This document shows, one piece after another, positions 1 to 64,000 of a stretch of 64,000 bases of DNA (position 1 is its first letter; the number at the start of each line of letters is the position of its first letter). Made by a program: the position numbers and the translations under genes. The notes beneath the pieces are model-generated. The model saw only the letters and a program-made list of their open reading frames with translations, was not told the origin of the DNA and did not search any database. Origin of the DNA: Macrostomum lignano (lineage: Eukaryota); the NCBI GenBank assembly GCA_002269645.1, contig NIVC01000875.1, forward strand, positions 62,001 through 126,000. The letters are read 5' to 3'.

Positions 1-289
1 AACAGAAGCAACACCGTAGCACTGATCTCGCATATACTCACTTTAAAGTCCTCATATTCATCTCTAGAAAAACGACAATTAACAAACGTTAAACATAAAA
101 CTTTGTAGAACATACCGAATTCCTATAAAATGTTATATCTTTGAACACATTTTCCTACTTTTAAGTAGAATATTGTGTACCAAACACGAATTTAGCTATG
201 AGTCACATGCGAAAGTATTAAAAAAACTTCACCTATAAAAAGAGGTGAAGCAACTCTGCGATTCTTGGGCTTCGCCAAAAAGTATAGCA

Positions 290-6932: not shown

Positions 6933-7117
6933 CTTGGTCTCTTCTTCTAGAGCAGAGAACTCTTTCGTCACTGATTTATATACTACAGCTTGATACGCTG
7001 CTTTTGGGCGTGAATCAAACCTTTTTCTTGAATTCCTTCATCTACTACTGCTCTGAGTAGTGCTGATCGCGTTTTCAAATTGAAATTGTCATTGGGTGTA
7101 TTCGAAGTACGCGCCTA

Positions 7118-37400: not shown

Positions 37401-37752
37401 CCTGTACCTGTATGAGCGGCTGACATGGACCGGCCGGGCCAGGGAGCGCCTGTTCAAGCGGCAGTATGTAGACTATGCCACGGCTAAGCTGCGGCTTATT
37501 GTCGATTTAACGTCGTCTAACGCTTCGCATCAGGTTCGCCAGGAGCTGGTCATGTGCCAGAAGAAACTGCTGCATGAGGTCGAATCTGAGGAGGCTTCGA
37601 AAATGTCCGAAGCGGAGAGACTGGAACGCCTCATCCGCAGGCTAGAGGAGGTCTGCTCAACCGCTAAGCGGCTGAAAAATCAGGCAGCCTTTTTGGACAA
37701 AACTTTGGCTAATTTTCATCAGACCCACATACTGCAGGACCGGCAGGAATAA
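31473..37752 (+). CDS. MFN: Mitofusin (fzo/Marf-type dynamin-like GTPase); exons 31473-31973, 33145-33617, 33725-33822, 33965-34224, 35450-35896, 37093-37752; 812 aa
   Basis: FFGRTSNGKSTVINAMLGRKVLPSGIGHTTNCFLQ|VEG (P-loop); LLDSPGVDV; FVLNNRWD; YFVSAKE; EEIRRL; CADFREDIEFRFSL; transmembrane segment followed by GWR...YGGLYLYERLTWT; HR2. All introns are GT-AG with consistent phases (2439 bp total). Confidence 0.95.
32035..33105 (+). repeat. 24-25 bp minisatellite (tctgtctgatcccatctccccaaat) filling mitofusin intron 1
   Basis: Tandem units are directly visible and account for the spurious minus-strand ORFs. Confidence 0.95.
34257..35420 (+). repeat. 21-22 bp minisatellite (atcccttcatccagtgtctgt, grading to atccagcatctcacacccctt) filling mitofusin intron 4
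   Basis: Tandem units; source of the PFIQCLY / SLHPVSV / IPSSSVC pseudo-ORFs. Confidence 0.95.
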
Positions 37753-48355: not shown

Positions 48356-49975
48356 ATGGCTCAGCCGGCTCAGCAGCTGCTGCTCCATCTGCTACTGCTG
48401 ATGCTGACAACCTCTCTGCTGACCTCGCAAGCCTCCAGCGCCGCTGTCAAATCCTCGGATAAACTCGAAGAGGAGCTGCTGCAACTCCGCGAGCTGATCG
48501 CCTCCGAGCTTGAACGACGAGCAGCAGTTAGGCTAGAAGATGGCGACAGTCCGGCGCTGACTGACAGGAAAGCTCCAGCCAGCCTCGCCGATGTCGTGGC
48601 CGGCGCCAAGGCCTACGCCTCCGGCCTGGCTACCTCTGCGGCTCCACCGCCGCCTGGAACCACGCTTGAACTTAAGGACGAAGCTGTGACGCCGATATGG
48701 AGCAACAGTTCCAGCAGAGTGAACGGCACCAGCCCCGCGGGTCTGTTCAGTCCGCAGTGGTTCGCGCACCTGCTGACCGTGATGCCGCTGGCCGCCTGGA
48801 TCGCAGTGCTCTGCGGCGCCGGGCTGCTGCTCTGCGCCCTGCTGGCTCTCATCATCTACTGCTGCTGCTGCCGCTCTAAAGATTTCTACGACGGCTCACG
48901 GCAACGCTTGAAACGGCAAGATGGATACGGTATGACGTTCAAAGATTTGGACATTGTTGGCAAAGAGCAGCCTCCGTACGGCGTCATTAACTATTCGCTG
49001 GAGTACGACGTTCCCTCATGCGAGCTCATCATCACCGCGACCAGCTGCATCGGCCTACCGAAGGATCTCAAGCAGCTCGATCCCTACCTTGTAATGCACG
49101 TGTCGCAGGATTCCATTGCGGGCAAGAAGAAGCATCGCTCGCACTCGGCAGGGCAAACTTCTGAGCGCTCCAAAATAGTGAAGAACACCGTCAATCCGGC
49201 CTTCAACTACACCCGGGTAGTCAAGATCAGGGATAAGCGGCTGCTCAGGCGAACCGTCATCAAGTTTGAGATCTACGACTACGACATCGGCAGTCGGCAC
49301 CAGATGATCGCTCGCCGAGAGCTGAAGCTGGCCAAGCTGGGCGAGAAGCTGGACGACATCCTCGGTAGGAAGGTGGAGTACACGAAAAACTTGAAAGCAG
49401 GCATTAATGAGGAGGCCAATGGACCTGGTGACATCTGCCTGGCTCTGTGCTACAGCACAATGGACAAATTGAACAAGTACCTGTGGGTGCATGTCATCGA
49501 GTGCAAAGGTGTGTTCATTCAACGCTTCGGTGAGCCGGATTTCGACACCCTGCCCAACACCTACGTGAAGCTGGCACTGCATGTTCCCGGCAGCAGGCGG
49601 ACGATCCAGTCCACCAAGCTCATCAAGGCGTCGAGAAATCCGTACTTCAACGAACAGTTCATATTCAAGACAGAGCTGAGCGAGTACATCAGTCTGAGAG
49701 TCTCTCTGATGCACCGCTCCGAGACCCTCGGTATTAAGCGGGTGATCGGGTCGCAGACGCTGTCGATGCAGGCAGACAAAGACAGCATCGAGCGGCTTCA
49801 CTGGAGAGACGTGCTTGAGAAGCAGGACATCCCGAGCGCGCGCTGGCACAGTCTGGTCACGCCAGAGGATGAGCGCAAGACCACGGAGCGCAAGGAGGCC
49901 GAAGAGCGAAAGCGAAAACTTGAGCGGGCGGAGGATGAGGCAGCGGCGGCGGCGGCCGCGGCTCTGTACCAGTGA
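48356..49975 (+). CDS. Intronless synaptotagmin-like protein (signal peptide, luminal region, TM, tandem C2), ~539 aa from the likely Met
   Basis: MAQPAQQLLLHLLLLMLTTSLL signal-like segment; TM ending in CCCC; C2A (GVINYSLEYD...DPY...NPAFN...IYDYD) and C2B (GDICLALCY...YVKL...RNPYFNEQFIF). The open frame extends upstream to 48233. Confidence 0.85.
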   Translation: MAQPAQQLLLHLLLLMLTTSLLTSQASSAAVKSSDKLEEELLQLRELIASELERRAAVRLEDGDSPALTDRKAPASLADVVAGAKAYASGLATSAAPPPPGTTLELKDEAVTPIWSNSSSRVNGTSPAGLFSPQWFAHLLTVMPLAAWIAVLCGAGLLLCALLALIIYCCCCRSKDFYDGSRQRLKRQDGYGMTFKDLDIVGKEQPPYGVINYSLEYDVPSCELIITATSCIGLPKDLKQLDPYLVMHVSQDSIAGKKKHRSHSAGQTSERSKIVKNTVNPAFNYTRVVKIRDKRLLRRTVIKFEIYDYDIGSRHQMIARRELKLAKLGEKLDDILGRKVEYTKNLKAGINEEANGPGDICLALCYSTMDKLNKYLWVHVIECKGVFIQRFGEPDFDTLPNTYVKLALHVPGSRRTIQSTKLIKASRNPYFNEQFIFKTELSEYISLRVSLMHRSETLGIKRVIGSQTLSMQADKDSIERLHWRDVLEKQDIPSARWHSLVTPEDERKTTERKEAEERKRKLERAEDEAAAAAAAALYQ

Positions 49976-50960: not shown

Positions 50961-51925
50961 TCTTCCCTTTGGTGGCCCTAGAGGTAAAGAAATTTTGCCG
51001 ACGCCAGATTTAGATATACAAGTTTAATTTTGAGTCTTACAACGATATTTGAAGTTGCGCCTGAATTGTGAAACCATATGCGGAGCGGACTTGTGCGATC
51101 GTGTGTACAGGAAATAGATTGGCTTATGCCACCTTTACGCTCGGTAAAATTTCAATTAGAAAAATTCTTCATTTCTTTGATATAAGCAGCGAAATTTGCG
51201 CAGTAAACGCAAGAACTGATATTTCCGCTGAGTGCTTTAAATAAACTCTGCAATTGTTCGCAAGGAATCGTACTGAAGGTATTCAAGTATATGTATTCGA
51301 CTATTTAGTAATTGAATCATGGAGTGTCATCACTGTACTACTTATATAGGGTTCAGGGTTAAATTTAAAGGTTAGGGTTGAAGGAGATAGGATAGGATCG
51401 AACCAGGGACCCGTTAAACCAGTTGTCCCTGGGTTGAACGTTTAGAGTAAAAGGGTCAGAGTAAAGCTGGGGTTACGCTAAAAGAGTTAGGGTTAACGGG
51501 TTAGGGCTCACGGGTTCGGGTTTGAAGGGTTAGGGTTGAAGGGTTAGGGTTGAAGGGTTGGTTGTTGAAGCATGTAGTAGGCCTGTAAAACATTTTTCAT
51601 GTAGGGGTCTCCCTAAGTAGAATTAGTAGACGTAGCCTAGTAGAATTACTCTTAGTAGAGTTATTACCGAAGAATACGCGCCACGTTCTCTCCTACGAGT
51701 ATTGCAAAATTAAACTACGTGTGGTCTAGTCTAATGTCGGTAAAAATCTAATTGCGTCGTTGGATATTGCCCCCAACCTACCACTGCGGTGCATTCTTTA
51801 TATTAGCTGTCGACCACTCACTGACAAAACGCTAGCGTTACCGCATGGGCATCGCAAAAACACCATTTTCAGTCAGCCACAATCGAAAGAAAAGCTACAA
51901 CAAAGTAACAAAATCAATCGACTCT

Positions 51926-52672
51926 ATGACGGCTCGGGTGCCAGCTGGAGAATACCGCTGCGACTTCTCCGATTTCGGCTGCAGATTCGTGTCCAACGGC
52001 CCGCAGTCTGAGACTCAACACTATGAGTCCCCTGACGGCAGGCATGAGCACATACGCTTGGCGAGCGACAAGCTGCGCAATCTTCAACAGACAGTCGATC
52101 GTTTGACGCAAAGCGTCAGGCAAAACCAGCAGGAACTTCGTAGAAAAAAGTTGGAAATCGACGAGCTCAATAGGAGGCTGCATCGATTGGAGGCACACAG
52201 CGAGCGCGTGATCTCCGTGTTCGAGCTGAGCATCCGGGATCTGCTCGCTGAGGACCCCGGCTGGCACCGCTGCCTCACGCAGCAGTTCGACTACGGCCTG
52301 GACATCCAGGCCCGCCTGCTCGAGTCTCCGACTGGCGCCGAGTTTCGCTTCCGGCTGCGGCTGCGACCGACGCCGCACGACCGAACTCTGCGGTGGCCGT
52401 TCCGGTCGACTGTCCGGGTCGCCGTTTTTCCTCCGGACGGTCAGCCGCAGCTTCTTCTTGAAGGGAGCTCAGCGACTCTGCTTCCGGAGAGACTTCCGGC
52501 CGATCAGCGGAGGCTGCTGGAAAGACCGGAGGCAGCTGGAGTTGAGGAACGGGAACGGAATTCCATTGAGATTCGAGCTCCGGCTCGACTCAGCAGGGCC
52601 CAGCTGCTCAGTCTGCCTGATGGAAGCTCCTTCGCTGCTCGAGTGGTCCTGCTGCCGGAAGGAGCTGAATGA
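51926..52672 (+). CDS. TRAF-like protein without RING (one TRAF-type zinc finger, coiled coil, divergent MATH-like domain), 248 aa
   Basis: CDFSDFGCRF...H...H; heptad coiled coil; D..LRWPF..V motif typical of TRAF MATH domains. Intronless. Confidence 0.65.
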   Translation: MTARVPAGEYRCDFSDFGCRFVSNGPQSETQHYESPDGRHEHIRLASDKLRNLQQTVDRLTQSVRQNQQELRRKKLEIDELNRRLHRLEAHSERVISVFELSIRDLLAEDPGWHRCLTQQFDYGLDIQARLLESPTGAEFRFRLRLRPTPHDRTLRWPFRSTVRVAVFPPDGQPQLLLEGSSATLLPERLPADQRRLLERPEAAGVEERERNSIEIRAPARLSRAQLLSLPDGSSFAARVVLLPEGAE

Positions 52673-53324
52673 GCACGGATTGCAGGGGTGCAAAATGAGT
52701 CCTGCCGGTATTTGACCTATTGTTCGTGACCTCTATTTCATATTCATTCAGTTCATGATTCAGCTTTAAGGCTTATCTGCATGTACAATAATTAATTCCT
52801 TAGTTTTACCAATGCGGAGTTAGCGCGGTAAGATGTGAAGCTAAGACACTTTTTATTCAGCTTTCTAAGTCAGCACTGTAATTTTCATTTGCGCCTCTTG
52901 CCAATGATACAAATTTTTATCATTTCATAGAACTTTTTTGAAGTCACGGTCATGTACTCGCATAGCTTTTACCATCAGTACTTTTGTTAATATTTCTTTG
53001 AATATTTACTTTTTAATTGTTTTTCATATTTTTTATAGGAAAACAGGCTATTCAATAATGATTGAGCAATACCTAGAGGTACCTATACACATGCAATATT
53101 TGTCTGTTCCTTCAGTTGCTGCGAAAACAAAAGCCGGAGAAAACAAGTGTGCAGAGTTTTTTGTTTCTCCTTTCACCCTGACAGATGCTTTGCTCATGTA
53201 CCCTCGTATCTATGGTAAAAAGCGCAACTTCAAACTGGAATAATCCGCATCGCTCCTATCGTTTTGGTCAGAAATTTTAGATTCCGCAGGGGAATTAAAC
53301 ATCAATCCCCCTTCAGCATCATTC

Positions 53325-54592
53325 ACACCTCAGCAACATTCCCCTCACCATCACCTCCCTCACCATCATCCCCCATCACCATCATCACCCATCACCATCA
53401 TCCCCCATCACCATCATCCCCCATCACCATCATCCCCCATCACCATCATCCCCCATCACCATCATCCCCCATCACCATCATCCCCCATCACCATCATCCC
53501 CCATCACCATCATCACCCATACCATAATCCCCCCTCATCATCATCCGCCCTGCGCATCATCCCCCTCATCATCATCCACCCTGCGCATCATCCCCCCCTC
53601 ATCATCATCCGCCCTAAGCATCATCCCCCCTCATCATCATCCGCCCTGCGCATCATCCCACCTCATCATCATCCGCCCTAAGCATCATCCCCCTCAGCAT
53701 CATCGCCCCTCAGCATCATCCCCCTCAGCATCATCCCCTCTCAGCATCATCCCCCCTCAGCATCATCCCCCTTCAGCATCATCCCCCCTCAGCATCATCC
53801 CCCCTCAGCATCATCCCCCCTCAGCATCATCCCCTCTCAGCATCATCCCCCCTCAGCATCATCCCCTCATCATCATCCGCCCTGCGCATCATCCCCTCTC
53901 ATCATCATCCGCCCTGCGCATCATCCCCCTCATCATCATCCACCCTGCGCATCATCCCCCCTCATCATCATCCGCCCTAAGCATCATCCCCCTCAGCATC
54001 ATCCCCCCTCAGCATCATCCCCCCTCAGCATCATCCGCCCTAAGCATCATCCCCCCTCATCATCATCCGCCCTAAGCATCATCCCCCCTCAGCATCATCC
54101 CCCCTCAGCATCATCCCCCCTCAGCATCATCCGCCCTAAGCATCATCCCCCTCATCATCATCCGCCCTAAGCATCATCCCCCCTCAGCATCATCCCCCTC
54201 AGCATCATCCCCCCTCAGCATCATCCCCCTCAGCATCATCCGCCCTGCGCCCTGCGCATCATCCCCCTCATCATCATCCGCCCTGCGCCCTGCGCATCAT
54301 CCCCCTCATCATCATCCGCCCTAAGCATCATCCCCCTCATCATCATCCCCCTCATCATCATCCGCCCTAAGCATCATCCCCCTCAGCATCATCTCCCCTC
54401 AGCATCATCCCCCCTCAGCATCATCCCCCTTCAGCATCATCCCCCCTCAGCATCATCCCCCCTCATCATCATCCGCCCTGAGCTTCATCCCCCTTCAGCA
54501 TCATCCCCCTCAGCATCATCCCCCTCAGCATCATCCCCCCTCAGCATCATCCCCACTCAGCATCATCCCCACTCAGCATCATCCCCACTCAG
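53325..54592 (+). repeat. C-rich 12-21 bp composite minisatellite (catcatccccctcag and variants)
   Basis: Tandem units are directly visible. Confidence 0.95.
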
Positions 54593-55105
54593 CCCCTCTC
54601 TCCTGTCTTCTTTCTTCTCTATTCCCTCTGAAACGATCTCTCTCCTCTCCTCTGGGCCACAGTCATGCACTGGGGTGGCCCTACATGTATGGGTAAAAAT
54701 ATTGCCGGGCCCCCAATTTACATATACGAGTTTAATTTTGAGTCTTTTGACTTTTAACAAAATGTGAAGTTGTGAATGTCGTACAACCCCATGCGAAGCG
54801 GGCTTGTGCGGTCGTGTGTACAAGCAGTAGATGCACCGGGGTTACGCCACCTTTACGCTCGATAAAATTTCAATTAGGAAAATGTCTTAATTTATTCTTT
54901 GTTATAAGCCGCTGAAATGCACAGCAACCACAAAACTGATACGAGTATTTTTGCTGAAAATGTTTTGAAAAAAATTTCTACAAGGTACTACGGTTTTGAG
55001 TTCTACTGGAATCGCACTGAAAATGTTTGAGTATGCTAAATAATTTGCCATTGAAGCTAAATTGATATAGTTATCGCTGCACTACTCATGAGTCTCTTAA
55101 TAACA

Positions 55106-56492
55106 GGGTTCAGGGTTAGGGTTGAAGGGTTAGGGTTGAAGGGTTAGGGTTGATGGGTTGGGTTGAAGGGTTAGAGTTGAAGGGTTAGGGTTGAAGGGTT
55201 AGGGTTGAAGGGTTAGGGCTGAAGGGTTAGGGCTGAACGGTTAGGGTTGAAGGGTTAGGGCTGAAGGGTTAGGGTTGAAGGGATAGAATTGAAGGGTTAG
55301 GGTTGAAGGGTTAGGGTTGAAGGGTTAGGGTTGAAGGGATAGGATTGAAGGGTTAGGGTTGAAGGGTTAGGGTTGAAGGGTTAGGGCTGAAGGGTTAGGG
55401 TTGAAGGGTTAGGATTGAAGGGTTAGGGTTGAAGGGATGGGATTAAAGGGTTAGGGCTGAGGGGTTAGGGTTGAAGGGTTAGGGTTGAAGGGTTAGGATT
55501 GAAGGGTTAGGGTTGAAGGGTTAGGATTGAAGGGTTAGGGCTGAAGGGATAGGATTGAAGGGTTAGGGCTGAAGGATTAGGGCTGAAGGGTTAGGGTTGA
55601 AGGGTTAGGGCTGAAGGGTTAGGGTTGAAGGGATAGAATTGAAGGGTTAGGGTTGAAGGGTTAGGGCTGAAGGGTTAGGGTTGAAGGGTTAGGGCTGAAG
55701 GGTTAGGGTTGAAGGGTTAGGGTTGAAGGGTTAGGGCTGAAGGGATAGGATTGAAGGGTTGGGGTTGAAGGGTTAGGGCTGAAGGGATAGGATTGAAGGG
55801 TTAGGGTTGAAGGGTTAGGATTGAAGGGTTAGGGCTGAGGGGTTAGGGTTGAAGGGTTAGGGTTGAAGGGTTAGGATTGAAGGGTTAGGGTTGAAGGGTT
55901 AGGGTTGAAGGGTTAGGGCTGAAGGGATAGGATTGAAGGGTTAGGGCTGAAGGGTTAGGGCTGAAGGGTTAGGGTTGAAGGGTTAGGGCTGAAGGGATAG
56001 GATTGAAGGGTTAGGGTTGAAGGGATAGGATTGAAGGGTTAGGGCTGAAGGGTTAGGGTTGAAGGGTTAGGGCTGAAGGGATAGGATTGAAGGGTTAGGG
56101 TTGAAGGGTTAGGGTTGAAGGGTTAGGGCTGAAGGGATAGGATTGAAGGGTTAGGGCTGAAGGGTTAGGGTTGAAGGGTTAGGGCTGAAGGGATAGGATT
56201 GAAGGGTTAGGGTTGAAGGGTTAGGGTTGAAGGGTTAGGGCTGAAGGGATAGGATTGAAGGGTTAGGGCTGAAGGGTTAGGGTTGAAGGGTTAGGGCTGA
56301 AGGGATAGGATTGAAGGGTTAGGGCTGAAGGGATAGGGCTGAAGGGTTAGGGTTGAAGGGTTAGGGCTGAAGGGATAGGATTGAAGGGTTAGGGCTGAAG
56401 GGATAGGATTGAAGGGTTAGGGCTGAAGGGTTAGGGCTGAAGGGTTAGGGCTGAAGGGATAGGATTGAAGGGTTAGGGTTGAAGGGTTAGGG
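55106..56492 (+). repeat. 14-bp G-rich satellite (GAAGGGTTAGGGTT)n containing TTAGGG; short degenerate copy at 51348-51570
   Basis: About 100 tandem units, with variants gggctgaa and gataggattgaa. Confidence 0.95.
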
Positions 56493-57632
56493 TCGTCTCT
56501 CTTCTTACGTATATTGCTTGTACTGTGCAACTGAATTGCATTGCCATAACAAAGTCTGCTCAAGGAATATGGAGCTACATGAACTCATAAATAATTAGCA
56601 TACTACGAGCGCGTACATAGTAAATAATTTAATTCGGTACCTTTTGTTTGGCTTAGCTATTTACCTCTTCAGGTAGGTCAGAAGGAAAATTCTTTAAAAA
56701 TAATTGAGTATCTCAACGGTCCTGAATTATATATCAACTTCAAACGTGCTGCAAATGCACACAACTCAACTTATATGAGTTGCTTACAAGCGTATGGCAG
56801 TAAAGCATTTTTCAGGTAGGGGACTCTTTAGAAGAATTAGTAGACGTGGCCAAGCAGAATTACTCTCAGTAGAGTTACTGGAAGAATAAGCGCCATGTTA
56901 TTTCCTAGTGCATAATTAAACTACGTGTGGTCTATTGTCTAATGCCGATGTGCCCTTCAACCCACCCCTGCGACGCATCCTTTAGCTATACCCGCCAAAC
57001 TTAATTCGTCCGATTTTTTGCTTTTAGCACCGGTATCTTGATCCGGTTTATTGTCCGGAATCGGCCCATATCCACAGTGTAAAGAAACCGGAACAGAGCC
57101 GGATAAAAAGTTACGTTTCAGGACCAGGCGTTCAGATTTTATCGCCTTTGCCCTGTTTTATGTCCGGTGATTATTCCGAAGTTTGTTCCGGTGCCTGATC
57201 CGGTCAAAGAGAGCCGGATGTTGCGCCGGTTTTGTTCCGGTGCCTGATCCGGTCAAAGAGAGCCGGATGTTGCGCCGGTTGCTGGACCGTGGCATTGACC
57301 GATCCAAATGGGATCGAGACCGGACCGAAAGCCGGACCGGCCCGGTTTAATATTGAACCGTTCTCTCCGGAGCAGGAGGCAGTCTTCCACGCGAATAGAA
57401 AATGAAAAGAAAATTGAAGAGTTTAAACTGAAGTACTTTTTTTTCAATCCAGGCATTTGTCAACCTTTCCATTTCCATGGCAATTTATTTTTACTTCCGA
57501 AACATCGAAAGCACCGAACATCGCAAATCACACATGGTCCCTTACAAATGCGTCGCTTCCCTTCTGGCGCTCACAAATGAGTCATAAAGGTGATAAAGGT
57601 GATAAAGGACGTTCAATTGGCCGAACCAACCG

Positions 57633-59544
57633 TCAAACCGCAAGCTTCAGCAAGTCAACGAGGCTACCGGCCGACTGCAAATCGTCCATGCTCGTGACGA
57701 GGTTAGCCGTCGTCACTGAAGCCGCCAACGTATCCGTAGCCGCAGTCGTAGTCGCAGGCGAAGGGTAAATGAGAACCGGATGGTTCTCATCAGGCTCCTC
57801 CATGACGAAAACGATGGCATGGGAGTCTGTCGTCGAGGAGGCCTTCTTCGGCCTCTTGGTAGCGCTTGGCCTCGGGCCGCTCGATCCGGGCCTCGGGCCG
57901 GTGATACGGCGGCACTTCAGTTTCGGCAGACCCTGGCGAACGCGTGCCGTCTCGCGGCAACGCGAGAAAGCGCGTTGTAGTTGGCGCTTAGTGGCGATGA
58001 CGCCAACGTTCTGCAGCCACTGCTTAGCGATAAGCAGTTTGGCTGGGTTAGCGGCAGCAGTCAGCCGGTCCCCAGCTTTCGGCCCGAGAAATTTGCGCCT
58101 GAAAACTCCGTCTCAGAGAACAGTGCCCGCAAGAGACACCGCAACAGCGACGAATGTTCCGAACGCAGTATTGCGGCGTAGTCCGGACGCTCTTCGTCGA
58201 TGTCCACATGTGGCTGGCCAGCCTTTTCTTTGGCCTGCAAATATGTACGGAGATGAGCTTCCAGTATAGAACGGCTCCCGACCTTGACAAATATATTCGG
58301 TTGGCGGTCCGACAGTGCGACGCGCCCACCGCTATTACTAGCACCGGCCGAGTTTTCAGCGCTGCAGGCAGTCATTATCGCGTGGGTGTCGCTGGCAGAC
58401 AAGGCAGCGTCAGCGACGAAGCGTTTGGCCGAGAAATCACTATCGTCCGCGCTATCACAGCTCATGCGTGTTTCGTCGTCGCTGTGACCAGCGACGTGTG
58501 TGCTAGTATCAGCATTGGTGGACAAATTGTCCGGGTCGGCAACAAGCATAGTGGACGCCCTGATCAGGAATGCGTTGCATGATTGCGCCCTGTTTTGCAT
58601 CTGCCGAATGACGTTGTCCTTGCGACGAATCTCACGCTCAAGGCTGCTCTCGCGCAGCGCCAAATAGGAGGTTCGCTCCTTCGCGTCGTCCAGACGCCGG
58701 CGCAGCTCCACTTCGGCAGCCGACTTGTCTCGTATCTCGCCTCCTGTCAGTGGAGACAAAAGTTAATGTTACTCCGATCAATCATACATTCCCCAGAACA
58801 TTCAACACTTACTTAGTGTCTCCACTAAGATGTCCGCCTTGCGACTTTCCAGTAGCAGGCTTCGACAGGACGCGCAGCCTCGAGGTGGCTCTCTGGTCGG
58901 GGCGTGCACATTCGTGAGGCGACAAGAAGCCGTCGCTTCTTCACGACTTTCGAAGGGCCCACGGATGAGAGTGCCGATCCACCGACGGGCAGTTTTCCTA
59001 TTACTTTTGGCCACTTTAATGGCAACAACACTCCCAACAGAAACTGGGATGGGTCCGTCGCTGCGGCGCTGCACAAATTCTCCGTAGTGGAGACAACGTC
59101 CGTGCGTTCCCGGGATTCGTCATAGCGCATGATGAAGAAGCGCTCGGTAGGCTCTTGCTTGTACGGGAGCATATCGGATCCTTCTTTCGACGGGTTGCCA
59201 CCGTCCCGGTTGACTCGCCTGCCACGTGTGTCTCGATCGCCAGAATCAGTAGCTGAGCACCCCGCCTCATGGGCGAAGCAATCGTCTGCGTCTGCACCAT
59301 TGGGCGTCGGATTTGCGGTTGGCGGCTTAGGTATGGTCGTCTGGACAGCATCGATCACGGGTGTTAGCGTGTCACTGCCAGCTGGTAGATTACCATTCGC
59401 AGCTGGCTGATCGTCCTTCGGCTTCGCCTTCGCCTTCTTCAGAGATCTTGGAGCTTTAGACTTCGAAGCAGTACTAGCCGCAGCGGCGGGAGCTGCGGGA
59501 GCGGCAGCTTTTTTTCCGCTTGCGAAGCAGGTCGCCTTGCCCAT
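57633..59544 (-). CDS. BEN-domain protein with coiled coil; exons 59544-58813 and 58743-57633; two apparent 1-bp frameshifts (~59082, ~58078)
   Basis: Phase-1 intron (a|GTAAGT...gacAG|ga). After correcting the frameshifts: ...DVVST/EFVQRRSDGPIPVSVGSVVAIK..., coiled coil, then LLRCLLRALFSETEFSGANFSG/KAGDRLTAAANPAKLLIAKQWLQ...LQRAFSRCRETAR, a BEN-like pattern. Confidence 0.6.
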
Positions 59545-60255
59545 TTAAAGACTGTAAGACATGGAGCAGGTTTTGAAATTAGGTAATTCCACGTAGAGAT
59601 GACAAAACTCACGAGTAAGAAAAGTGTGTTCGCCTGCTTCTACGAAGAGACATGCAAGATGTACAGTATGTGCCTAGGCGTGTAGAAACTCGAAACTAGA
59701 ACGAAAAAGGAAACTAGATTATGCAACATCTATAGTATGCAAGAAACTATACTACAGTTAATAGAGTATGCAAGTTAAAGAACTTTCGAAAGAAGACAGC
59801 TGACAGATACCCAGCGCTTCGCGTGGAGCTGCAGCTCAACAAAAGCAAATCGTTGTTTTTATTGGCATTTCGTCTGTAGCTCCCAGCTCTTCTCCAGATC
59901 CAGACTCCATCATGCAGTCAAAAAGGTGGTAACGAAGAATAACATTAAAAACATACCTCCCCTGTTTACTCCCATGCAGAATTACATGGATGCTGCCACA
60001 AGAAAATTAAGTAGGTATATGTGCACATGTGTAGTTCGCTTAAGAATCAAACAACAACAATCAAACAATAGAGCAAGTTTTTTCTATTGCGCAAATCGAA
60101 ATTACCGTGTCAATGCCTACACTGAGTAACATACTAACGTCCCTCACTAACTAACTCACTCACTAACCTGGAGTCAGTCACGCCTTCGAGAGGATCAAAA
60201 AGTCGGGATCTAAAAAAGTGTGGCTTTTAGTATGCTGCCCAGTATATCAGTCCAA

Positions 60256-61137
60256 TCAATTCTTTCCGTGGGCCTTCTTCTCCTGCTGGAGCTCACGCAG
60301 ATCCCTTAGTGGCCGTCTGCGGCGGCGTAGCGGTCGCATTGCCGCCACAGGTGCTTCCGGCGGAGTCTCGGGCATGTCAATCGCCCAGAACTGACGTGGA
60401 TCCGCAATGGGTTTCGGTTGGTTCGACCGGTGTTTGCCGGCCTGCTGCAGTCGTCTTTGGCGGCTTTCTGGAGACAGGTTAGAATACCACGACTCGCAGT
60501 CCGGACAGCAGTGCGCCTGCAATTCTAGCCTGTCGGCTTTGCGCCTGCATGGGAAGACGCACGCCGGTCTCGAAGTCCTCTCCGGCAACAGGTTGTAATC
60601 AGCGCGGATTTGAGAAGACGACATGCCGGCATACAGGCCTGCAAAGAGACTGACCCGGCGGCTGGGTTCCGGTGCCGGCTCTGCGGCGGGTGGTACGTGG
60701 TACATGTCAGGGCCCTGCGTCTCAGAACCCTCCTCGTCGTCGTAGTTGAACCTGTCGACTGCCTCGGGTTCCGGTGCCGGCTCTGCGGCGGGTGGTACGT
60801 GGTACATGTCAGGGCCCTGCGTCTCAGAACCCTCCTCGTCGTCGTAGTTGAACCTGTCGACTGCCTCATCGGCGGGTTCCTCATTCGATGCCGCCACGGG
60901 TTTCGCTAGCACAAGTGGAGTCGAATCGAAAGGCCACATCGACTGCAACACTTGCGTACTAGGAATGTCATCTAATGCGACGATGGCCCTATGCGCCCGC
61001 ACCATGGACCCCGTGTTAAAAACTGGCGACGTGGGACGTGAACGGCCGAGTCGAAGGAGCTCAGAACGGAGCAAACGGTTCTCCTCTGTGAGGGCGCGGC
61101 AGATGGGACAGCTGGCTGCGTGTGACCAGTGGTCCAT
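60256..61137 (-). CDS. Compact CtIP/Sae2-like protein (N-terminal CxxC + short coiled coil, C-terminal SAE2-type domain), 293 aa
   Basis: C-terminal RRKADRLELQAHCCPDCESWY...RQRRLQQAGKHR...DPRQFWAIDMPET matches the CtIP signature (RKK.ER..L....CxxC..YY......RHR......TP..FW...FP.T). N-terminal CPIC...EENRLLRSEL. Confidence 0.8.
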   Translation of the reverse strand: MDHWSHAASCPICRALTEENRLLRSELLRLGRSRPTSPVFNTGSMVRAHRAIVALDDIPSTQVLQSMWPFDSTPLVLAKPVAASNEEPADEAVDRFNYDDEEGSETQGPDMYHVPPAAEPAPEPEAVDRFNYDDEEGSETQGPDMYHVPPAAEPAPEPSRRVSLFAGLYAGMSSSQIRADYNLLPERTSRPACVFPCRRKADRLELQAHCCPDCESWYSNLSPESRQRRLQQAGKHRSNQPKPIADPRQFWAIDMPETPPEAPVAAMRPLRRRRRPLRDLRELQQEKKAHGKN

Positions 61138-61455
61138 CGCTGTAAAATTGGGGTAATCGTTATGGCGCTGAAGCGCGTTACCGTTCGAAATTCACAGCTA
61201 TTCAACATACTGTGTATACAGCATACTATACTGTACTACAACTAATAGAGGTGCTGGAACTAGTCGTACAGTAACTATAACGATACAAATACAGATCACA
61301 GCAGAAACTGTCGCTGAGTTTGATTTCGACGTGAACGAGTATGTCCGATGACATCCTAGATGCTATAGTCATTGTACAAACGGAAGCAGAAGACAACAGA
61401 AAGGCAATGTGTTTTAACTCTTTTAGTTTTCGTCTCGTTTATTTCAATACCTACC

Positions 61456-61689
61456 TTAATTATATACCTTAGTGTTACATAGAACGGAAGAATTGAAACT
61501 ATAACTTTCATTTTTTAGGCGAAGAAACACATCATCACATTGTCTTAACTTCGAGCAATGAAGACATAACAAACGCTTGTACTGCTGTTCTCGTTGAGAC
61601 AGTCTGACTGGAGCAAAATAGGTGTACATTTTTGGGTGGGCGTGACAGGAATTGGATATGTATTGTTTAGCCTCGGACCACTTAGTCAT
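61456..61689 (-). CDS. Small 77-aa ORF with CxxH and CxxC motifs between the transposase and the CtIP-like gene
   Basis: SCHAHPK...LCLHCSK; co-oriented with the element's genes; ATG start. No homology recognised. Confidence 0.3.
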   Translation of the reverse strand: MTKWSEAKQYISNSCHAHPKMYTYFAPVRLSQREQQYKRLLCLHCSKLRQCDDVFLRLKNESYSFNSSVLCNTKVYN

Positions 61690-61738
61690 CTTAGCCAGTA
61701 GTTAGCGACAAAACAAAGCACCGAAGCATCCGAGTGGA

Positions 61739-64000
61739 TCAATGATATGACAACTGTGGGTGAGGCAACAGTGCGATGTGGCTCTCGGAAAGGACACACG
61801 AACCGATGACATCCTCAAGCGGTAGTAGTAGCGGATCTCCGTAGTCCGCCAAATCGCCGAATGGATCGGCTGCAAGCCGCCGCACGTGAGCGCAACGGCA
61901 GCCACGCCTAGCGGAATTGCCACGTACAGCACATAGTGCCTCTAACGGGTCCTGATCTGGTTCGCGGACCGGTAGAATTAGGACCCGAAGTGACACTTGT
62001 GCACCGGTACTACTAATGGCTTCAACTCGTGCAAAACGAAATGTCGTCGGACGAAACCCGGAAATTGCAACGAAACACGATGCTACAGTGCGGCGCAGTG
62101 GGCGGTTATCGTTTTGTCGGCTGATGAAAACTACAATGACCAGCCCTGAGGGCAGTGTCGCACTGCGCCACCCATCCAGCATGCCATGCGGTCGTCGAAG
62201 AACTATGGAGTTACGGAGAACGATTTCCGTGCGCCGATGGCTCCGTTGTCGCCTCTCCAAGCCCTCAGCACCTAGCAGACGCGCTCCAATCTGGTTGGCG
62301 GCTATCTGTCTCTCCACTGACGTAACCACGTCAGCCTCGTTGTTGCTCGAGCCATGAAGGAGCTGTTGTAATCGTTTGTGCATGGTTTCGAACAACCCAG
62401 TTGATTGATGATGTATCGGCCCACCGGAGTCTACAGCGCTCAGCATGTGGCAGCAAACTTGATGGGCGTTGTACGTAAGCGCCCGAGTGGAATATAAGCG
62501 CGGTAAATTTGCGAGGAAGCATCTGAGGGACACCTCGACGTGGTCCAGTTCGTCCTTTGGCCCACCTTCAAGTCCCATCCAAAACACAGCCGTTGATAGA
62601 ACTAGTAAATGGTTGTAGTGGTCCGGCGGCAGAAAATCACCCAGAACGAGCGGAGCGAACACTAAAATCCACATTTCTAGTTCGTGTCCACGAAGATGGC
62701 GCAGGTCCTTCAGCTTCCTAACACTGTGGCGTTGCACTGATCGTGGCACGAGAATGCGATTGAGACGCTCGCCGACATCGCCAAGTCTGGGGTGCAGGTC
62801 CGGACAGTTAGTGTCTGCACGGTCTGGCTTCTCATTGCGGATTGCGAACATCTGTAGCAATATCCGACGAACGAGCCCGCCGCACAACTGGTGCAAATAA
62901 CAGGGCGGACAACCTTTTATAAAATCAAAGCCAGGCAGCCTGCTTAGAGGAGAGTGTCCGTACACACCGAGTACGTCGCGGCAAGTACCACCGCCGTTGC
63001 TCACATGTAGATCGGCAAGGTGCGAAGTGTCAGCAGCATTACGCACTGTTGTCTGTGTACAGCCTAGCATAGCAGGAGCGTTCAACATGGCGGGTGTAGC
63101 TTCGACGTGAAAAAGTCGCCCGCCGCCTTGCAAGTAACCGGTCCGCAGATAGCATTTGTCGCAGTATTTTCCGGAAAAGCGACGCATGCATAGAGCGTCC
63201 GCCCTCGCCGGGGCGTCCATCATCCCAAGGAGGGGATGGAGGCGCAGGACGCAAGTCTCGCCGTTGGCGTTGTTGTACGTTACACCTATGGTACGCAGGC
63301 TGGACAAGACGTTTACCATAACAGGCAGAAATGCGGCGGCCTTGACTTTTTGCTTGCCAGCCCACACTCCTGCGATGAAAACGTATCGCAGTTTAACTCG
63401 GTCGTGTACCTCTACGATGGAAATGTAGAATGGGCACACTTCGACGCAGCTAGTACTGAACCGAGGAAAACCATCGAAGCAGAAAACGTACGACAGATCG
63501 GCTCGGCGCTGTACATCGATGACCTCCAGAAAGTCTCGGTACAACGAGCTGTTGTACACGTGCAAAACGTCCGGCTGCACGTCGCGGTCAGCAGGCCAAA
63601 CGACGTTGTCAAGAAGTCCACCGCTCTCGATAGACTGTCGGATCTGCTGACGCACGTCGAATGCGTAAAAGTTGGCCACAGATTCTTCGCCGCAGTGTGC
63701 ACAGACGTCACCATCGGAAACGTGCCGAAAACGAGTGCGACGCATGCAGCTATTGCAAACGGCGTTGCAAACCGTCGAACCAATCGCTGACTGCGCTGAG
63801 CTGACGCACGACTCCAGACTTCGTCTTGTTCGCGGTAGACTACAGCCTGGCATAAGGCGATGAAGCAGCGCCATCAGTTTGTCGACTACATGATGCTTCA
63901 TGTGCGTCTCTATGACGAACAGCATAATGTCTGACGCAGCCTGGCCCAGCGTTCCCGGAAGCGCTGGATGGAACGGCTGATGCAGTTGTGCATCCGGTAC
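61739..64000 (-). CDS. CMC-EnSpm (CACTA-type) DDE transposase, 5' end outside the window
   Basis: CxxC...CxxC N-terminal finger; FCFDGFPRF (D1); MMDAPARA...FSG.YCDKC (D2); GVYGHSPLSRLPGFD; CYLH (C/DxxH); TYNAH; GPI...LFE (E). The frame stays open from 63925 to the window end (VPDAQLHQPFHPALPGTLGQAASDI). Confidence 0.9.
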   Translation of the reverse strand, partial: VPDAQLHQPFHPALPGTLGQAASDIMLFVIETHMKHHVVDKLMALLHRLMPGCSLPRTRRSLESCVSSAQSAIGSTVCNAVCNSCMRRTRFRHVSDGDVCAHCGEESVANFYAFDVRQQIRQSIESGGLLDNVVWPADRDVQPDVLHVYNSSLYRDFLEVIDVQRRADLSYVFCFDGFPRFSTSCVEVCPFYISIVEVHDRVKLRYVFIAGVWAGKQKVKAAAFLPVMVNVLSSLRTIGVTYNNANGETCVLRLHPLLGMMDAPARADALCMRRFSGKYCDKCYLRTGYLQGGGRLFHVEATPAMLNAPAMLGCTQTTVRNAADTSHLADLHVSNGGGTCRDVLGVYGHSPLSRLPGFDFIKGCPPCYLHQLCGGLVRRILLQMFAIRNEKPDRADTNCPDLHPRLGDVGERLNRILVPRSVQRHSVRKLKDLRHLRGHELEMWILVFAPLVLGDFLPPDHYNHLLVLSTAVFWMGLEGGPKDELDHVEVSLRCFLANLPRLYSTRALTYNAHQVCCHMLSAVDSGGPIHHQSTGLFETMHKRLQQLLHGSSNNEADVVTSVERQIAANQIGARLLGAEGLERRQRSHRRTEIVLRNSIVLRRPHGMLDGWRSATLPSGLVIVVFISRQNDNRPLRRTVASCFVAISGFRPTTFRFARVEAISSTGAQVSLRVLILPVREPDQDPLEALCAVRGNSARRGCRCAHVRRLAADPFGDLADYGDPLLLPLEDVIGSCVLSESHIALLPHPQLSYH

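What the first reader, a model, noticed from the sequence alone, without database searches (positions are those of the whole stretch)
56991..64000. EnSpm/CACTA-type transposon carrying its own CtIP/Sae2-like DNA end-processing gene plus a BEN-domain gene
An intact-looking DDE transposase is followed on the same strand, with short spacers, by a CtIP/Sae2-like ORF, a BEN-domain gene and then subterminal repeats. Established: CtIP/Sae2 activates the MRN/MRX nuclease to open hairpin-capped or protein-blocked ends and start resection, and CACTA/hAT-type excision is thought to leave hairpin-sealed flanks. Inference: the element encodes a dedicated repair co-factor to resolve its excision site or steer repair towards homologous recombination, which would restore the donor copy and raise copy number. 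I know of no description of such a module, but could not search.
Basis: partly seen in the sequence, partly recalled or inferred. Interest (0 to 1): 0.93.

Follow-up and report, generated by a model that had tools for sequence, protein, structure and literature searches.

The report
Flatworm transposon carrying a CtIP-like gene
The end of this window is one end of a cut-and-paste transposon in the flatworm Macrostomum lignano. Between its RAG1-like transposase gene and its usual second gene it carries a compact copy of the DNA-repair factor CtIP/Sae2; this is an unusual cargo whose use by the element is plausible but unproven.

Summary
Window 56991-64000 (M. lignano contig NIVC01000875.1) is the 3' part of a DNA transposon read on the minus strand. 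It contains a transposase ORF open to the window end, a 293-aa CtIP/Sae2-like ORF, a two-exon third gene, CCGG-rich subterminal repeats and a terminus at 56991.

- **Transposase:** it belongs to the EnSpm/CACTA-Mirage-Chapaev-Transib clade. It has D-D-C(2)C-H(4)H-E, its relatives hit Pfam Tnp2, and the AlphaFold model matches core RAG1. The termini read CCCGC, not CACTA.
- **CtIP-like ORF:** it passes Pfam SAE2. It keeps CxxC, KHR, FW and the T859 equivalent, and has two copies of the NBS1-binding SETQGP motif. Asp replaces the CDK site T847.
- **Not a family feature:** three related elements have transposase followed directly by gene 3, with no CtIP.
- **Third gene:** the "BEN" label is unconfirmed, and this copy carries two 1-bp frameshifts at homopolymers.
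- **Limits:** only one copy was seen, with no expression data. The other end and the TSD lie outside the window.

The repair-cofactor idea is better grounded, because a RAG1-like enzyme implies hairpin flanks, but it is untested. I rate it about 0.5, against about 0.35 for a passive passenger.

The parts
56991..57020 (-). 3' terminus of the element (terminal inverted repeat arm), CCCGCCAAACTTAATTCGTCCGATTTTTTG read inward
   Evidence: Homology to a paralogous uninterrupted site (window about 51.5-51.74 kb) stops exactly here. It shares CCCGC...TCGTCCG.TTTTT with the 33-bp, 97% complementary TIRs of the complete relative L001.
56991..57340 (.). Subterminal repeat region with 17 CCGG-core motifs, including a perfect 49-bp tandem duplication (57182-57279). 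Presumed binding sites for an element protein.
   Evidence: 48.6 CCGG/kb against 1.9/kb background and 1.6 expected. L001 has the same enrichment at both ends, 56 and 45/kb against 1.3/kb inside.
57633..58743 (-). Gene 3, exon 2: coiled coil plus a C-terminal helical domain with the motif LLRALFSxxEFSxxNFSGRK (BEN-like by eye only). There is a 1-bp frameshift at a CCCC/GGGG run near 58070-58075. The stop codon is at 57633-57635.
   Evidence: Homologous to L001 8575-9342, L003 2947-4419 and L004 5097-6365. Frameshift. No Pfam BEN hit. hhalign against BANP/BEND3 BEN gives E 0.056, probability 1%. The AF2 model has pLDDT 43.
58744..58812 (-). Intron of gene 3 (GTAAGT...CAG), phase 1, at the conserved ..TLR.. 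junction
   Evidence: Same position and phase as the intron in L001.
58813..59544 (-). Gene 3, exon 1: N-terminal YWVV...GPFE module and a CxxC. There is a 1-bp frameshift at an AAA/TTT run near 59073-59077.
   Evidence: Alignment with three homologues. An acceptor-like ttacag ends 7 nt before the ATG.
60256..61137 (-). CtIP/Sae2-like ORF, 293 aa, with no intron. Features: C10xxC13 plus a short helix, SETQGP at aa 104-109 and 138-143, C211xxC214, K235-H-R237, D246-P, F250-W251, T258-P.
   Evidence: PF08573 hit above the curated cutoff. Motifs were compared with human CtIP peptides printed in PMC8079451, the RHR motif in PMC6344080 and the 'CxxC...RHR' motif in bioRxiv 10.1101/2023.08.05.552090. 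Positions.
60664..60867 (-). Perfect in-frame 102-bp tandem duplication inside the CtIP-like ORF. It duplicates the 34-aa unit that carries SETQGP.
   Evidence: TRF reports 2.0 copies at 100% identity. Residues 92-124 and 126-158.
61138..61149 (-). Splice-acceptor-like site (ccccaattttacag|cg) ending 2 nt before the CtIP-like ATG
   Evidence: The same feature precedes the ATG of the element's own genes in the window, L001, L003 and L004. Background frequency is 1.8% within 10 nt and 4.4% within 30 nt.
61739..64000 (-). Transposase gene, at least 753 codons visible, with the N-terminus outside the window. It has a CxxC...CxxC zinc finger (C57, C60, C75, C78), DDE residues D151/D237/E513 with C255xxC258 and H488x4H493, and a C-terminal beta-rich domain (aa about 565-728).
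   Evidence: AF2 model: pLDDT 88.5, pTM 0.91. Foldseek: core RAG1 E 5e-9, TM 0.46-0.60; HzTransib E 1e-3.

Best explanation
Window 56991-64000 is the 3' 7 kb of a roughly 10-12 kb autonomous-type DNA transposon of the EnSpm/CACTA-Mirage-Chapaev-Transib (CMCT) clade. It sits in the Macrostomum lignano genome.

The core of the family is two genes:
- a RAG1-like DDE transposase;
- a second gene with a coiled coil and a C-terminal helical domain. It probably binds the CCGG-core subterminal repeats, as TnpA does in En/Spm (inferred).

In this lineage only, a compact intronless CtIP/Sae2-family gene of cellular origin sits between these two genes. It is on the same strand. A splice-acceptor-like site lies directly before its ATG, as for the element's own genes, and an AATAAA follows it. 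So it is probably expressed as one of the element's cistrons, either by cis-splicing from a common leader as in En/Spm or by the SL trans-splicing known in M. lignano (inferred).

Proposed mechanism (inferred, not shown):
1. The RAG1-like transposase excises by nick-and-hairpin and leaves hairpin-capped donor flanks.
2. The mini-CtIP binds NBS1 through its two SETQGP motifs. It co-activates the MRE11-RAD50 endonuclease through its C-terminal CxxC...KHR...D-P..FW domain.
3. Asp at the CDK site would make this independent of cell-cycle phosphorylation.
4. The flanks are then opened and resected. This improves survival of the excision site and may favour copying the element back from the sister or homologue.

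Shown: element identity, gene order, position inside the element, CtIP family membership and motifs. Inferred: expression, MRN activation and any benefit to the element.
For: Transposon identity:
- 5546 relatives, and relatives hit PF02992.
- The CMCT signature D-D-C(2)C-H(4)H-E is invariant (signature defined in PMC12730594).
- The fold matches RAG1 and Transib.
- A complete relative, L001, has 33-bp TIRs and the same CCGG subterminal repeats.
- The terminus is confirmed by a paralogous empty site.

Cargo lies inside the element:
- Transposase and gene 3 are adjacent in L001, L003 and L004. In the window the CtIP ORF lies between them.

CtIP membership:
- PF08573 above the cutoff.
- KPIAD246PRQFWAID aligns with human RYIPPN(pT847)PENFWEVG.
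- WAIDMPET258P aligns with WEVGFPS(pT859)Q.
- DEEGSETQGP (x2) aligns with VQEE(pS)E(pT271)QGP, which binds Nbs1 with Kd 12 uM.
- CxxC...RHR is the conserved C-rich-H motif.

Signs that the cargo is wired in and maintained:
- An acceptor-like hexamer ends 2 nt before its ATG, as for 5 of 5 other assessable element genes. Background is 1.8% within 10 nt.
- The ORFs are GC-rich islands (55-61% GC) between 40%-GC spacers, each followed by AATAAA.
- No close homologue exists among 5.8 billion proteins, which include the annotated M. lignano proteomes. So it is not a recent copy of an annotated host gene, yet all short functional motifs are kept.

Biological plausibility:
- Sae2/CtIP-MRX/MRN cleaves hairpin-capped ends, and no revertants of Ac/Ds excision were recovered in yeast lacking Mre11 or Sae2 (PMC3299998).
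- The T847E/T859E phosphomimic stimulates MRN (PMC6344080).
- A 15-aa C-terminal Ctp1 peptide suffices to stimulate Mre11.
Against: - The CtIP gene is absent from the three nearest elements with the same core genes, from two M. lignano relatives and from 28 long relatives. It is therefore dispensable for the family.
- Only one copy was seen, and no copy or fragment occurs in about 130 kb of other M. lignano DNA held.
- Gene 3 of this copy has two frameshifts. The copy may be decaying, in which case an open CtIP ORF could simply reflect youth.
- A 100% identical 102-bp internal duplication looks like a very recent, unselected event.
- No CtIP N-terminal tetramerisation domain is detectable, and that domain is needed for CtIP function in cells (PMC6344080).
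- None of the three ORFs is in the transcriptome-based annotation of the contig.
- Codon usage is intermediate between host and element genes.
- CACTA-type elements are well known for capturing host gene fragments without function (general knowledge).
Confidence: 0.5

Rival explanations
1. Passive passenger. The CtIP-like ORF is a transduplicated or retro-copied piece of a cellular CtIP gene. It was picked up by this CACTA-like lineage and rides along without any role in transposition. Its open frame reflects the youth of the copy, not selection.
For: - It is absent from all related elements examined.
- Only a single copy was seen.
- This copy already has two frameshifts in gene 3.
- A perfect 102-bp internal duplication is present.
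- The protein is truncated relative to typical metazoan CtIP, with no detectable N-terminal tetramerisation domain.
- It is not annotated or expressed in Mlig_3_7.
- Gene capture by CACTA elements is common (general knowledge).
Against: - It is a complete ORF with its own start and stop and no intron. It retains every short functional CtIP motif examined.
- It has the same acceptor-before-ATG layout as the element's genes.
- No close parent gene is found among the annotated proteins.
- It sits in an autonomous-type element between the two core genes rather than in a deleted derivative.
Confidence: 0.35
2. Interference rather than help. The truncated CtIP lacks the tetramerisation domain and acts as a dominant-negative or decoy for NBS1/MRN. 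It would damp resection or checkpoint signalling at transposon-induced breaks instead of promoting hairpin opening.
For: - No N-terminal CtIP domain was detected.
- The NBS1-binding SETQGP motif is duplicated.
- Tetramerisation-defective CtIP is defective in DNA binding and bridging (PMC6344080).
Against: The C-terminal activating region is complete and carries an acidic residue at the activating CDK site. C-terminal peptides alone can stimulate Mre11. There is no direct evidence either way.
Confidence: 0.07
3. Not one element. The CtIP-like gene is a host gene, or part of a different insertion, that happens to lie between two transposon fragments. Alternatively the arrangement is an assembly chimera of the PacBio-based contig.
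For: - Mlig_3_7 is a Canu assembly of PacBio reads from a highly repetitive neopolyploid genome (PMC5730564).
- The other end of the element was not seen.
- A weak 20-nt inverted match (75%) flanks the ORF.
Against: - Transposase, CtIP ORF, gene 3, subterminal repeats and terminus are colinear, on one strand and in the same order as in L001.
- There are no TIRs, TSD, poly(A) tail or other insertion signatures around the ORF.
- The window is 100% identical to the deposited contig over 21.6 kb.
Confidence: 0.05

Closest known systems
En/Spm (CACTA) of maize and the CMC/CMCT clade (EnSpm, Mirage, Chapaev, Transib, Plavaka)
   Same: [quoted passage not shown]
- Relatives match Pfam Tnp2.
- TIRs plus many short subterminal repeats.
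- A second element gene downstream of the transposase, on the same strand.
- ATGs preceded by acceptor sites, which fits the single-promoter, alternative-splicing strategy of En/Spm.
   Different: - Termini are CCCGC...GCGGG rather than CACTA / 5'-CA..TG-3'.
- No TSD is visible in L001.
- There is no direct Pfam hit for this transposase.
- The second gene is unrelated to TnpA.
- An extra CtIP-like gene is present.
RAG1 / Transib transposase
   Same: The predicted fold of the transposase aligns with core RAG1 over about 620 columns (E 5e-9, TM up to 0.60) and with HzTransib. Both share the C(2)C/H(x)H zinc site.
   Different: - Sequence identity is only 11-13%.
- There are no heptamer/nonamer-like ends and no RAG2-like partner.
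- Hairpin formation by this enzyme is inferred, not shown.
Cellular CtIP / Sae2 / Ctp1 / COM1
   Same: - C-terminal SAE2 domain.
- CxxC...[K/R]HR.
- P-x-x-F-W.
- Thr at the T859 position.
- An acidic SxT (SETQGP) NBS1-binding motif.
   Different: - Only 293 aa.
- No recognisable tetramerisation domain.
- Asp instead of the CDK-phosphorylated Thr/Ser.
- T258 is followed by P rather than Q.
- The SETQGP unit is duplicated.
- It is encoded inside a transposon.
DNA transposons that carry an accessory gene of cellular type: TET/JBP dioxygenase in EnSpm, Plavaka, KDZ and others (PMC12730594); His-Me endonuclease in KolobokP (PMC9587614); RPA-like genes in Helitrons (from memory)
   Same: An autonomous element carries, next to its transposase, a gene that acts on DNA or chromatin and may serve the element.
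   Different: Those cargos recur across many families and species, which is the evidence for their use. Here only one copy in one lineage was seen. A CtIP/Sae2 cargo was not found in the literature searched.
Pack-type gene capture (Pack-MULEs, CACTA and Helitron transduplicates)
   Same: A host-derived coding sequence lies inside a DNA transposon.
   Different: Captured pieces are usually fragments, often chimeric and located in non-autonomous elements. Here a complete ORF with all of its functional motifs sits between the core genes of an autonomous-type element.

Membership tests
EnSpm/CACTA-Mirage-Chapaev-Transib (CMC/CMCT) transposons | [quoted passage not shown] | tested here: met
   D151, D237, C255, C258, H488, H493 and E513 are invariant in 39 sequences and nearly invariant in 150.
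EnSpm/CACTA-Mirage-Chapaev-Transib (CMC/CMCT) transposons | Sequence homology to Tnp2/TnpD transposases (Pfam PF02992) | tested here: met
   There is no direct hit for the window protein or P0001. However, 27/39 and 19/28 HMMER-detected relatives hit PF02992 (best E 3e-18), and some hit DUF1258, DUF4218 or Plavaka. Membership is therefore transitive.
EnSpm/CACTA-Mirage-Chapaev-Transib (CMC/CMCT) transposons | RAG1/Transib-like catalytic core fold | tested here: met
   AF2 model pLDDT 88.5. Foldseek: 29 RAG1 chains at E<=1e-3, best 5e-9, and HzTransib at 1e-3.
EnSpm/CACTA-Mirage-Chapaev-Transib (CMC/CMCT) transposons | Terminal inverted repeats with subterminal repeats | tested here: met
   L001 has 33-nt TIRs, 97% complementary. 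The window terminus resembles them. CCGG subterminal repeats are present in both. Only one end of the window copy is visible.
EnSpm/CACTA-Mirage-Chapaev-Transib (CMC/CMCT) transposons | Termini 5'-CACTA (EnSpm proper) or 5'-CA..TG-3' | tested here: not met
   Termini read CCCGC.../...GCGGG in both the window and L001. So this is not EnSpm/CACTA in the narrow sense.
EnSpm/CACTA-Mirage-Chapaev-Transib (CMC/CMCT) transposons | Target site duplication of 2-5 bp | tested here: inconclusive
   L001 flanks (..acaat | cctca..) show no duplication. The other end of the window copy lies outside the window. The paralogous empty site only fixes the insertion point.
CtIP/Sae2/Ctp1 | C-terminal SAE2 domain (Pfam PF08573) above the curated cutoff | tested here: met
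   22.7 bits against a cutoff of 19.8, E 2.2e-4, residues 227-258 on profile positions 78-108 of 110.
CtIP/Sae2/Ctp1 | 'CxxC...RHR' C-rich-H motif (bioRxiv 10.1101/2023.08.05.552090; RHR = R837-R839 in human, PMC6344080) | tested here: met
   C211-P-D-C214, then K235-H-R237. The first Arg is replaced by Lys, which is a conservative change.
CtIP/Sae2/Ctp1 | CDK phospho-site just downstream of RHR (T847 human / S267 yeast) | tested here: not met
   Aligned on P-x-x-F-W with the human peptide RYIPPN(pT)PENFWEVG (PMC8079451), the window has D246-P. This is an acidic residue rather than a phospho-acceptor. S. pombe Ctp1 also lacks the site (Ile).
CtIP/Sae2/Ctp1 | Acidic SxT motif that binds the NBS1 FHA domain | tested here: met
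   DEEGSETQGP occurs twice (aa 104-109 and 138-143). It matches human VQEE(pS)E(pT271)QGP, which has Kd 12 uM for Nbs1. Binding was not tested here.
CtIP/Sae2/Ctp1 | N-terminal coiled-coil tetramerisation domain | tested here: not met
   No CtIP_N or other N-terminal Pfam hit at E<=1. Only a CxxC plus a helix-like stretch of about 20 aa is present at residues 10-31.
CtIP/Sae2/Ctp1 | Stimulates MRE11-RAD50 endonuclease; hairpin and blocked-end processing | not testable with these tools
   A biochemical or genetic assay is needed.
BEN domain proteins | Match to the Pfam BEN profile | tested here: not met
   No BEN hit at E<=10 for the window gene 3 (raw or frame-corrected) or for its homologues in L001, L003 and L004.
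BEN domain proteins | Profile or structural similarity to solved BEN domains | tested here: inconclusive
   - The profile of 4 homologues against PDB sequences gave no hit.
- hhalign against BANP+BEND3 BEN aligns 52 columns in the expected register, but E is 0.056 and probability 1%.
- The single-sequence AF2 model is all-helical but has pLDDT 43, so it is unusable.

The most novel reading that the evidence does not exclude
A cut-and-paste transposon with a RAG1-like transposase encodes its own streamlined CtIP that does not depend on the cell cycle. The protein has Asp at the CDK switch and a doubled NBS1-binding motif. It would recruit and activate host MRE11-RAD50-NBS1 at the hairpin-capped donor site. 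This would be a mobile element that brings a regulator of double-strand-break repair pathway choice with it, in the way that V(D)J recombination relies on dedicated hairpin opening.
Probability: 0.3. Interest if true: 0.85.

Novelty: new variant of a known kind. Interest (0 to 1): 0.6.

Why it matters
DNA transposons are normally assumed to rely entirely on host repair of the excision site. Which pathway repairs it decides both host survival and whether the element gains a copy. An element-encoded CtIP would be the first case of a eukaryotic cut-and-paste transposon carrying a regulator of end resection.

It would also link CACTA-type elements mechanistically to the RAG1/Transib hairpin pathway. 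It would provide a natural minimal CtIP of 293 aa, with an acidic CDK site and tandem NBS1 motifs, for dissecting MRN activation.

M. lignano is a transgenic, regenerating flatworm model, so the idea is testable. If the gene is only a passenger, the finding is still a clean example of whole-gene capture by a new CMCT family with unusual CCCGC termini.

Tried and rejected
**Searches that found nothing**
- Word-index homology searches: the transposase found only P0001, the CtIP ORF found nothing, and an 8-sequence profile again found only P0001.
- Two metagenome-contig scans and two viral-contig scans for related loci. One attempt failed because no conserved stretch was available.
- PDB sequence searches with the CtIP ORF, a human CtIP C-terminal sequence and the gene-3 profile.
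- Other copies of the element or its terminus in the window or in the other M. lignano loci held.

**BEN**
- Pfam on four homologues, including a frame-corrected translation, gave no hit.
- The single-sequence AF2 model was too poor to use.
- hhalign against solved BEN domains was not significant.

**Origin of the CtIP ORF**
- Nested-insertion or retrocopy origin: no TIR, TSD or poly(A) tail flanks it.
- The N-terminus of the CtIP ORF resembles the CxxC segment of gene 3 (SCPICRALTEE against SCPSCKQLMTE). This is only an 11-aa, non-significant match.
- Codon-usage likelihood ratio, host against element: the CtIP ORF is intermediate (-0.009), so this is uninformative.
- SAE2 or BEN domains fused in long relatives: none.

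**Extending the element**
- Extending the contig past window base 64000 was not possible. No annotated gene lies in the last 14 kb to anchor a look-up.
- The homeologous contig locus ends about 270 bp short of the insertion point.

Full report
**What is there**

On the minus strand of window 56991-64000 lie, in order:
- a long ORF (61739-63925, still open in frame to base 64000);
- a 293-aa ORF (60256-61137);
- two ORFs that form one gene (58813-59544 and 57633-58743, separated by a 69-nt GTAAGT...CAG intron);
- about 650 bp of non-coding DNA ending at 56991.

The three coding regions are GC-rich islands (55-61% GC). The spacers of 601 and 711 bp have 40% GC. Each coding region is followed within 300-400 nt by an AATAAA.

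**Host and context**

A C2-domain gene of the window (48356-49975) is an exact annotated product of Macrostomum lignano assembly GCA_002269645.1. The window is 100% identical to contig NIVC01000875.1 over the 21.6 kb that could be compared. This places the window at contig positions 62001-126000.

The surroundings are ordinary flatworm nuclear DNA: mitofusin, a C2-domain gene, WSC-domain paralogues, a LINE, and TTAGGG-like satellites.

Mlig_3_7 is a Canu assembly of PacBio reads polished with Pilon. Its gene set is transcriptome-based (PMC5730564). None of the three ORFs is annotated on the contig.

**The transposase**

Pfam finds nothing directly. A profile of the window protein and its one close relative (P0001, 49% identity, from a Tara Oceans contig) finds 5546 relatives in an exhaustive search. 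The nearest come from metagenome contigs and from M. lignano itself, at 35-37% identity.

Of the sampled relatives, 27/39 and 19/28 match PF02992 (Transposase_21/Tnp2). Others match DUF1258, DUF4218 or Plavaka.

Invariant residues are C57, C60, C75, C78, D151, D237, C255, C258, H488, H493 and E513. This is the D-D-C(2)C-H(3-4)H-E signature that defines the EnSpm-Mirage-Chapaev-Transib (CMCT) clade (PMC12730594).

An AlphaFold model built on 39 sequences is confident (pLDDT 88.5, pTM 0.91). Its best PDB matches are 29 chains of core RAG1 (best E 5e-9, about 620 aligned columns, TM 0.46-0.60), followed by HzTransib at E 1e-3. The 'DDE transposase of the CACTA kind' is therefore confirmed in the broad sense.

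**The element and its end**

P0001 lies on a 10.2-kb contig (L001) that holds a complete element:
- 33-nt TIRs, 97% complementary (CCCGCTGAAAAAATCGTCCGG...);
- CCGG-rich subterminal repeats at both ends;
- the transposase gene;
- a two-exon gene homologous to the window's third gene, with the intron at the same place and phase.

The window sequence from 56991 inward (CCCGCCAAACTTAATTCGTCCGATTTTTTG) shares the terminal CCCGC and the TCGTCCG.TTTTT block with those TIRs.

CCGG cores occur 17 times in 56991-57340. That is 48.6/kb, against 1.9/kb elsewhere and 1.6 expected from composition. L001 shows 56 and 45/kb at its ends against 1.3/kb inside.

Independently, the 330 bp left of 56991 are a diverged copy of window sequence at about 51.5-51.74 kb. 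The similarity stops exactly at 56990/56991. The terminus is therefore real.

The termini are not CACTA, and L001 shows no target-site duplication. The other end of the window copy lies beyond base 64000.

**The third gene**

It follows the transposase directly in L001, in L003 (about 170 bp after the stop) and in L004 (about 1 kb after). It has three conserved parts: an N-terminal YWVV...GPFE module, a CxxC followed by a coiled coil, and a C-terminal helical domain with LLRALFSxxE(F/L)SxxxxSGR.

That motif resembles BEN domains by eye. However:
- Pfam gives no BEN hit for any of the four proteins;
- a profile search of PDB sequences finds nothing;
- hhalign against the solved BANP and BEND3 BEN domains aligns the right register but without significance (E 0.056, probability 1%);
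- the single-sequence model is unusable.

BEN is therefore unconfirmed.

The window copy needs two 1-bp corrections to read through. One is at a TTT run near 59073 and one at a GGGG run near 58075, on the coding strand. Each would be repaired by one extra base in the homopolymer. They may be real decay or residual PacBio errors. Against the error explanation, the neighbouring 4.8 kb of ORFs show no frameshift.

By analogy with TnpA of En/Spm, I infer that this protein binds the CCGG subterminal motifs.

**The CtIP-like ORF**

PF08573 (SAE2/CtIP C-terminus) matches residues 227-258 above the curated cutoff (22.7 against 19.8 bits). Comparison with human CtIP peptides printed in PMC8079451 gives gap-free matches:

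| Window ORF | Human CtIP | Note |
|---|---|---|
| KPIAD246PRQFWAID | RYIPPN(pT847)PENFWEVG | Asp at the CDK site |
| WAIDMPET258P | WEVGFPS(pT859)Q | Thr conserved, followed by P rather than Q |
| DEEGSETQGP (aa 104-109 and 138-143) | VQEE(pS)E(pT271)QGP | the human peptide binds Nbs1 with Kd 12 uM |

Upstream lie C211xxC214 and K235-H-R237. These correspond to the 'CxxC...RHR' motif conserved in most eukaryotic CtIPs. RHR is R837-R839 in the human protein.

The CDK-phosphorylated residue that switches on MRN/MRX stimulation (T847/S267) is thus replaced by Asp. Phosphomimetic T847E/T859E CtIP stimulates MRN. S. pombe Ctp1, which has Ile at this position, works without CDK.

No N-terminal tetramerisation domain is detectable.

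The two SETQGP motifs sit in a 100% identical, in-frame 102-bp tandem duplication at 60664-60867.

No homologue was returned by the word-index search of 5.8 billion proteins, which includes the annotated M. lignano proteomes. So the ORF is not a recent copy of an annotated host gene. The host CtIP itself could not be retrieved.

**Is it part of the element, and is it a family feature?**

The ORF lies between two genes that are neighbours in every related element, on the same strand and inside the confirmed terminus.

It is nevertheless lineage-specific:
- tblastn finds nothing like it in L001, L003, L004 or two M. lignano relatives with 10-kb flanks;
- none of 28 long relatives carries a SAE2 domain.

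No insertion signatures flank it.

One feature ties it to the element's expression system. An acceptor-like [CT]T[ACT]CAG ends 2 nt before its ATG. The same holds for gene 3 in the window (7 nt), the L001 transposase (4 nt), and gene 3 of L001, L003 and L004 (18, 2 and 27 nt). Only 1.8% of all ATGs in the window have such a site within 10 nt, and 4.4% within 30 nt. This fits splicing from a common leader, as in En/Spm. It also fits SL trans-splicing of polycistronic transcripts, which is documented in M. lignano (PMC5730564).

**Mechanism and weighing**

Shown: a CMCT transposon with a RAG1-like enzyme carries a genuine CtIP-family gene inside its ends.

Established elsewhere:
- RAG1, Transib and hAT enzymes leave hairpins on the flanking DNA.
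- MRX-Sae2 / MRN-CtIP cleave hairpin-capped and blocked ends.
- In yeast, no Ac/Ds excision revertants were recovered without Mre11 or Sae2, although Pso2 does most of the hairpin opening (PMC3299998).

Inferred: the element's mini-CtIP docks on NBS1 and activates MRE11-RAD50 at the donor site, independently of CDK.

For this reading: motif retention in a streamlined protein, the acidic CDK site, the acceptor layout, and the lack of a close parent gene. Against it: absence from relatives, a single copy, a possibly decaying gene 3, a perfect recent internal duplication, no tetramerisation domain, and no transcript evidence.

My estimates are about 0.5 for cargo used by the element and about 0.35 for a passive passenger. 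The remainder is split between a decoy role and an artefact.

**Novelty**

Full-text searches found no paper that describes a CtIP/Sae2 gene in a transposon. The closest precedents are transposons that carry TET/JBP dioxygenases, including EnSpm and Plavaka lineages (PMC12730594), and KolobokP with a His-Me endonuclease (PMC9587614). Ordinary gene capture by CACTA, MULE and Helitron elements is also a precedent.

This is a new variant of a known kind: a new CMCT family with CCCGC termini and an unusual cargo. A genome-wide census, transcript data and an MRN assay would decide whether it is more than that.

Noticed in passing
whole window: The window is Macrostomum lignano GCA_002269645.1 contig NIVC01000875.1, positions 62001-126000. 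It is 100% identical over the 21.6 kb compared. A diverged duplicate of the region (91-98% identity) lies on NIVC01000754.1, as expected for this neopolyploid genome.
   Followed up: yes
window 61739-62230 (transposase residues about 565-728): The C-terminal beta-rich domain of the transposase model gives weak Foldseek hits to BAH and Tudor chromatin-reader domains: rice ASI1 BAH E 0.22 (probability 0.99), SHL BAH, and 53BP1 tandem Tudor. It may be a chromatin-targeting module.
   Followed up: no
window 51470-51740 vs 56480-56990; ORF 51845-52672: The element inserted into a repeated unit (satellite plus about 330 bp). At 51.7 kb the uninterrupted copy lies about 40 bp upstream of the ATG of a MATH/TRAF-like ORF. 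A paralogous gene may therefore lie just beyond the element's other end.
   Followed up: partly
L008 17822-21353 (homeologous contig NIVC01000754.1): A P-element-like transposon (THAP / Tnp_P_element, long TIRs starting CAGGGACAACTAAAACCC) interrupts the AGGGTTAGGGTTGA satellite in the homeologue. It is absent from the window.
   Followed up: no
window 40145-43044 (minus strand): A non-LTR retrotransposon (endonuclease plus RT) with a frame break inside the RT domain. It is absent from the homeologous contig, so it inserted after the duplication.
   Followed up: partly
window 55112-56493, 53300-54593, 51482-51559: Long tandem arrays: a 14-mer AGGGTTAGGGTTGA (99 copies, telomere-repeat-like, interstitial) and a 16-mer CATCATCCCCCCTCAG (81 copies), just left of the element.
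   Followed up: no
window 59650-59780, 60229-60238, 61205-61250: A short motif (TATAGTATGC / CTCTATTA..TGTAGTA) recurs in both spacers flanking the CtIP-like ORF, about 110 and 220 nt upstream of the CtIP and gene-3 ATGs. The individual matches are not significant. It could be a shared regulatory element.
   Followed up: partly
window 61099-61110 vs gene 3 (window about 58850; L001 8118-8150): The CtIP-like ORF starts with SCPICRALTEE. This resembles the CxxC-coiled-coil junction of gene 3 (L001: SCPSCKQLMTE). It is only 11 aa and not significant, but it could hint at a chimeric origin of the N-terminus.
   Followed up: partly
L001 130-720: The 5' subterminal region of the related Tara Oceans element consists of about four tandem 153-bp units, each carrying several CCGG motifs. 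About 3.2 kb of unassigned sequence separates them from the transposase ATG.
   Followed up: no
window 245-724, 6498-6971, 21651-22103; 31473-37752: Three paralogous WSC-domain ORFs are present. There is also a mitofusin gene whose 33.9-35.5 kb stretch, lying between its exons, is an extremely repetitive, strongly C-skewed sequence.
   Followed up: no
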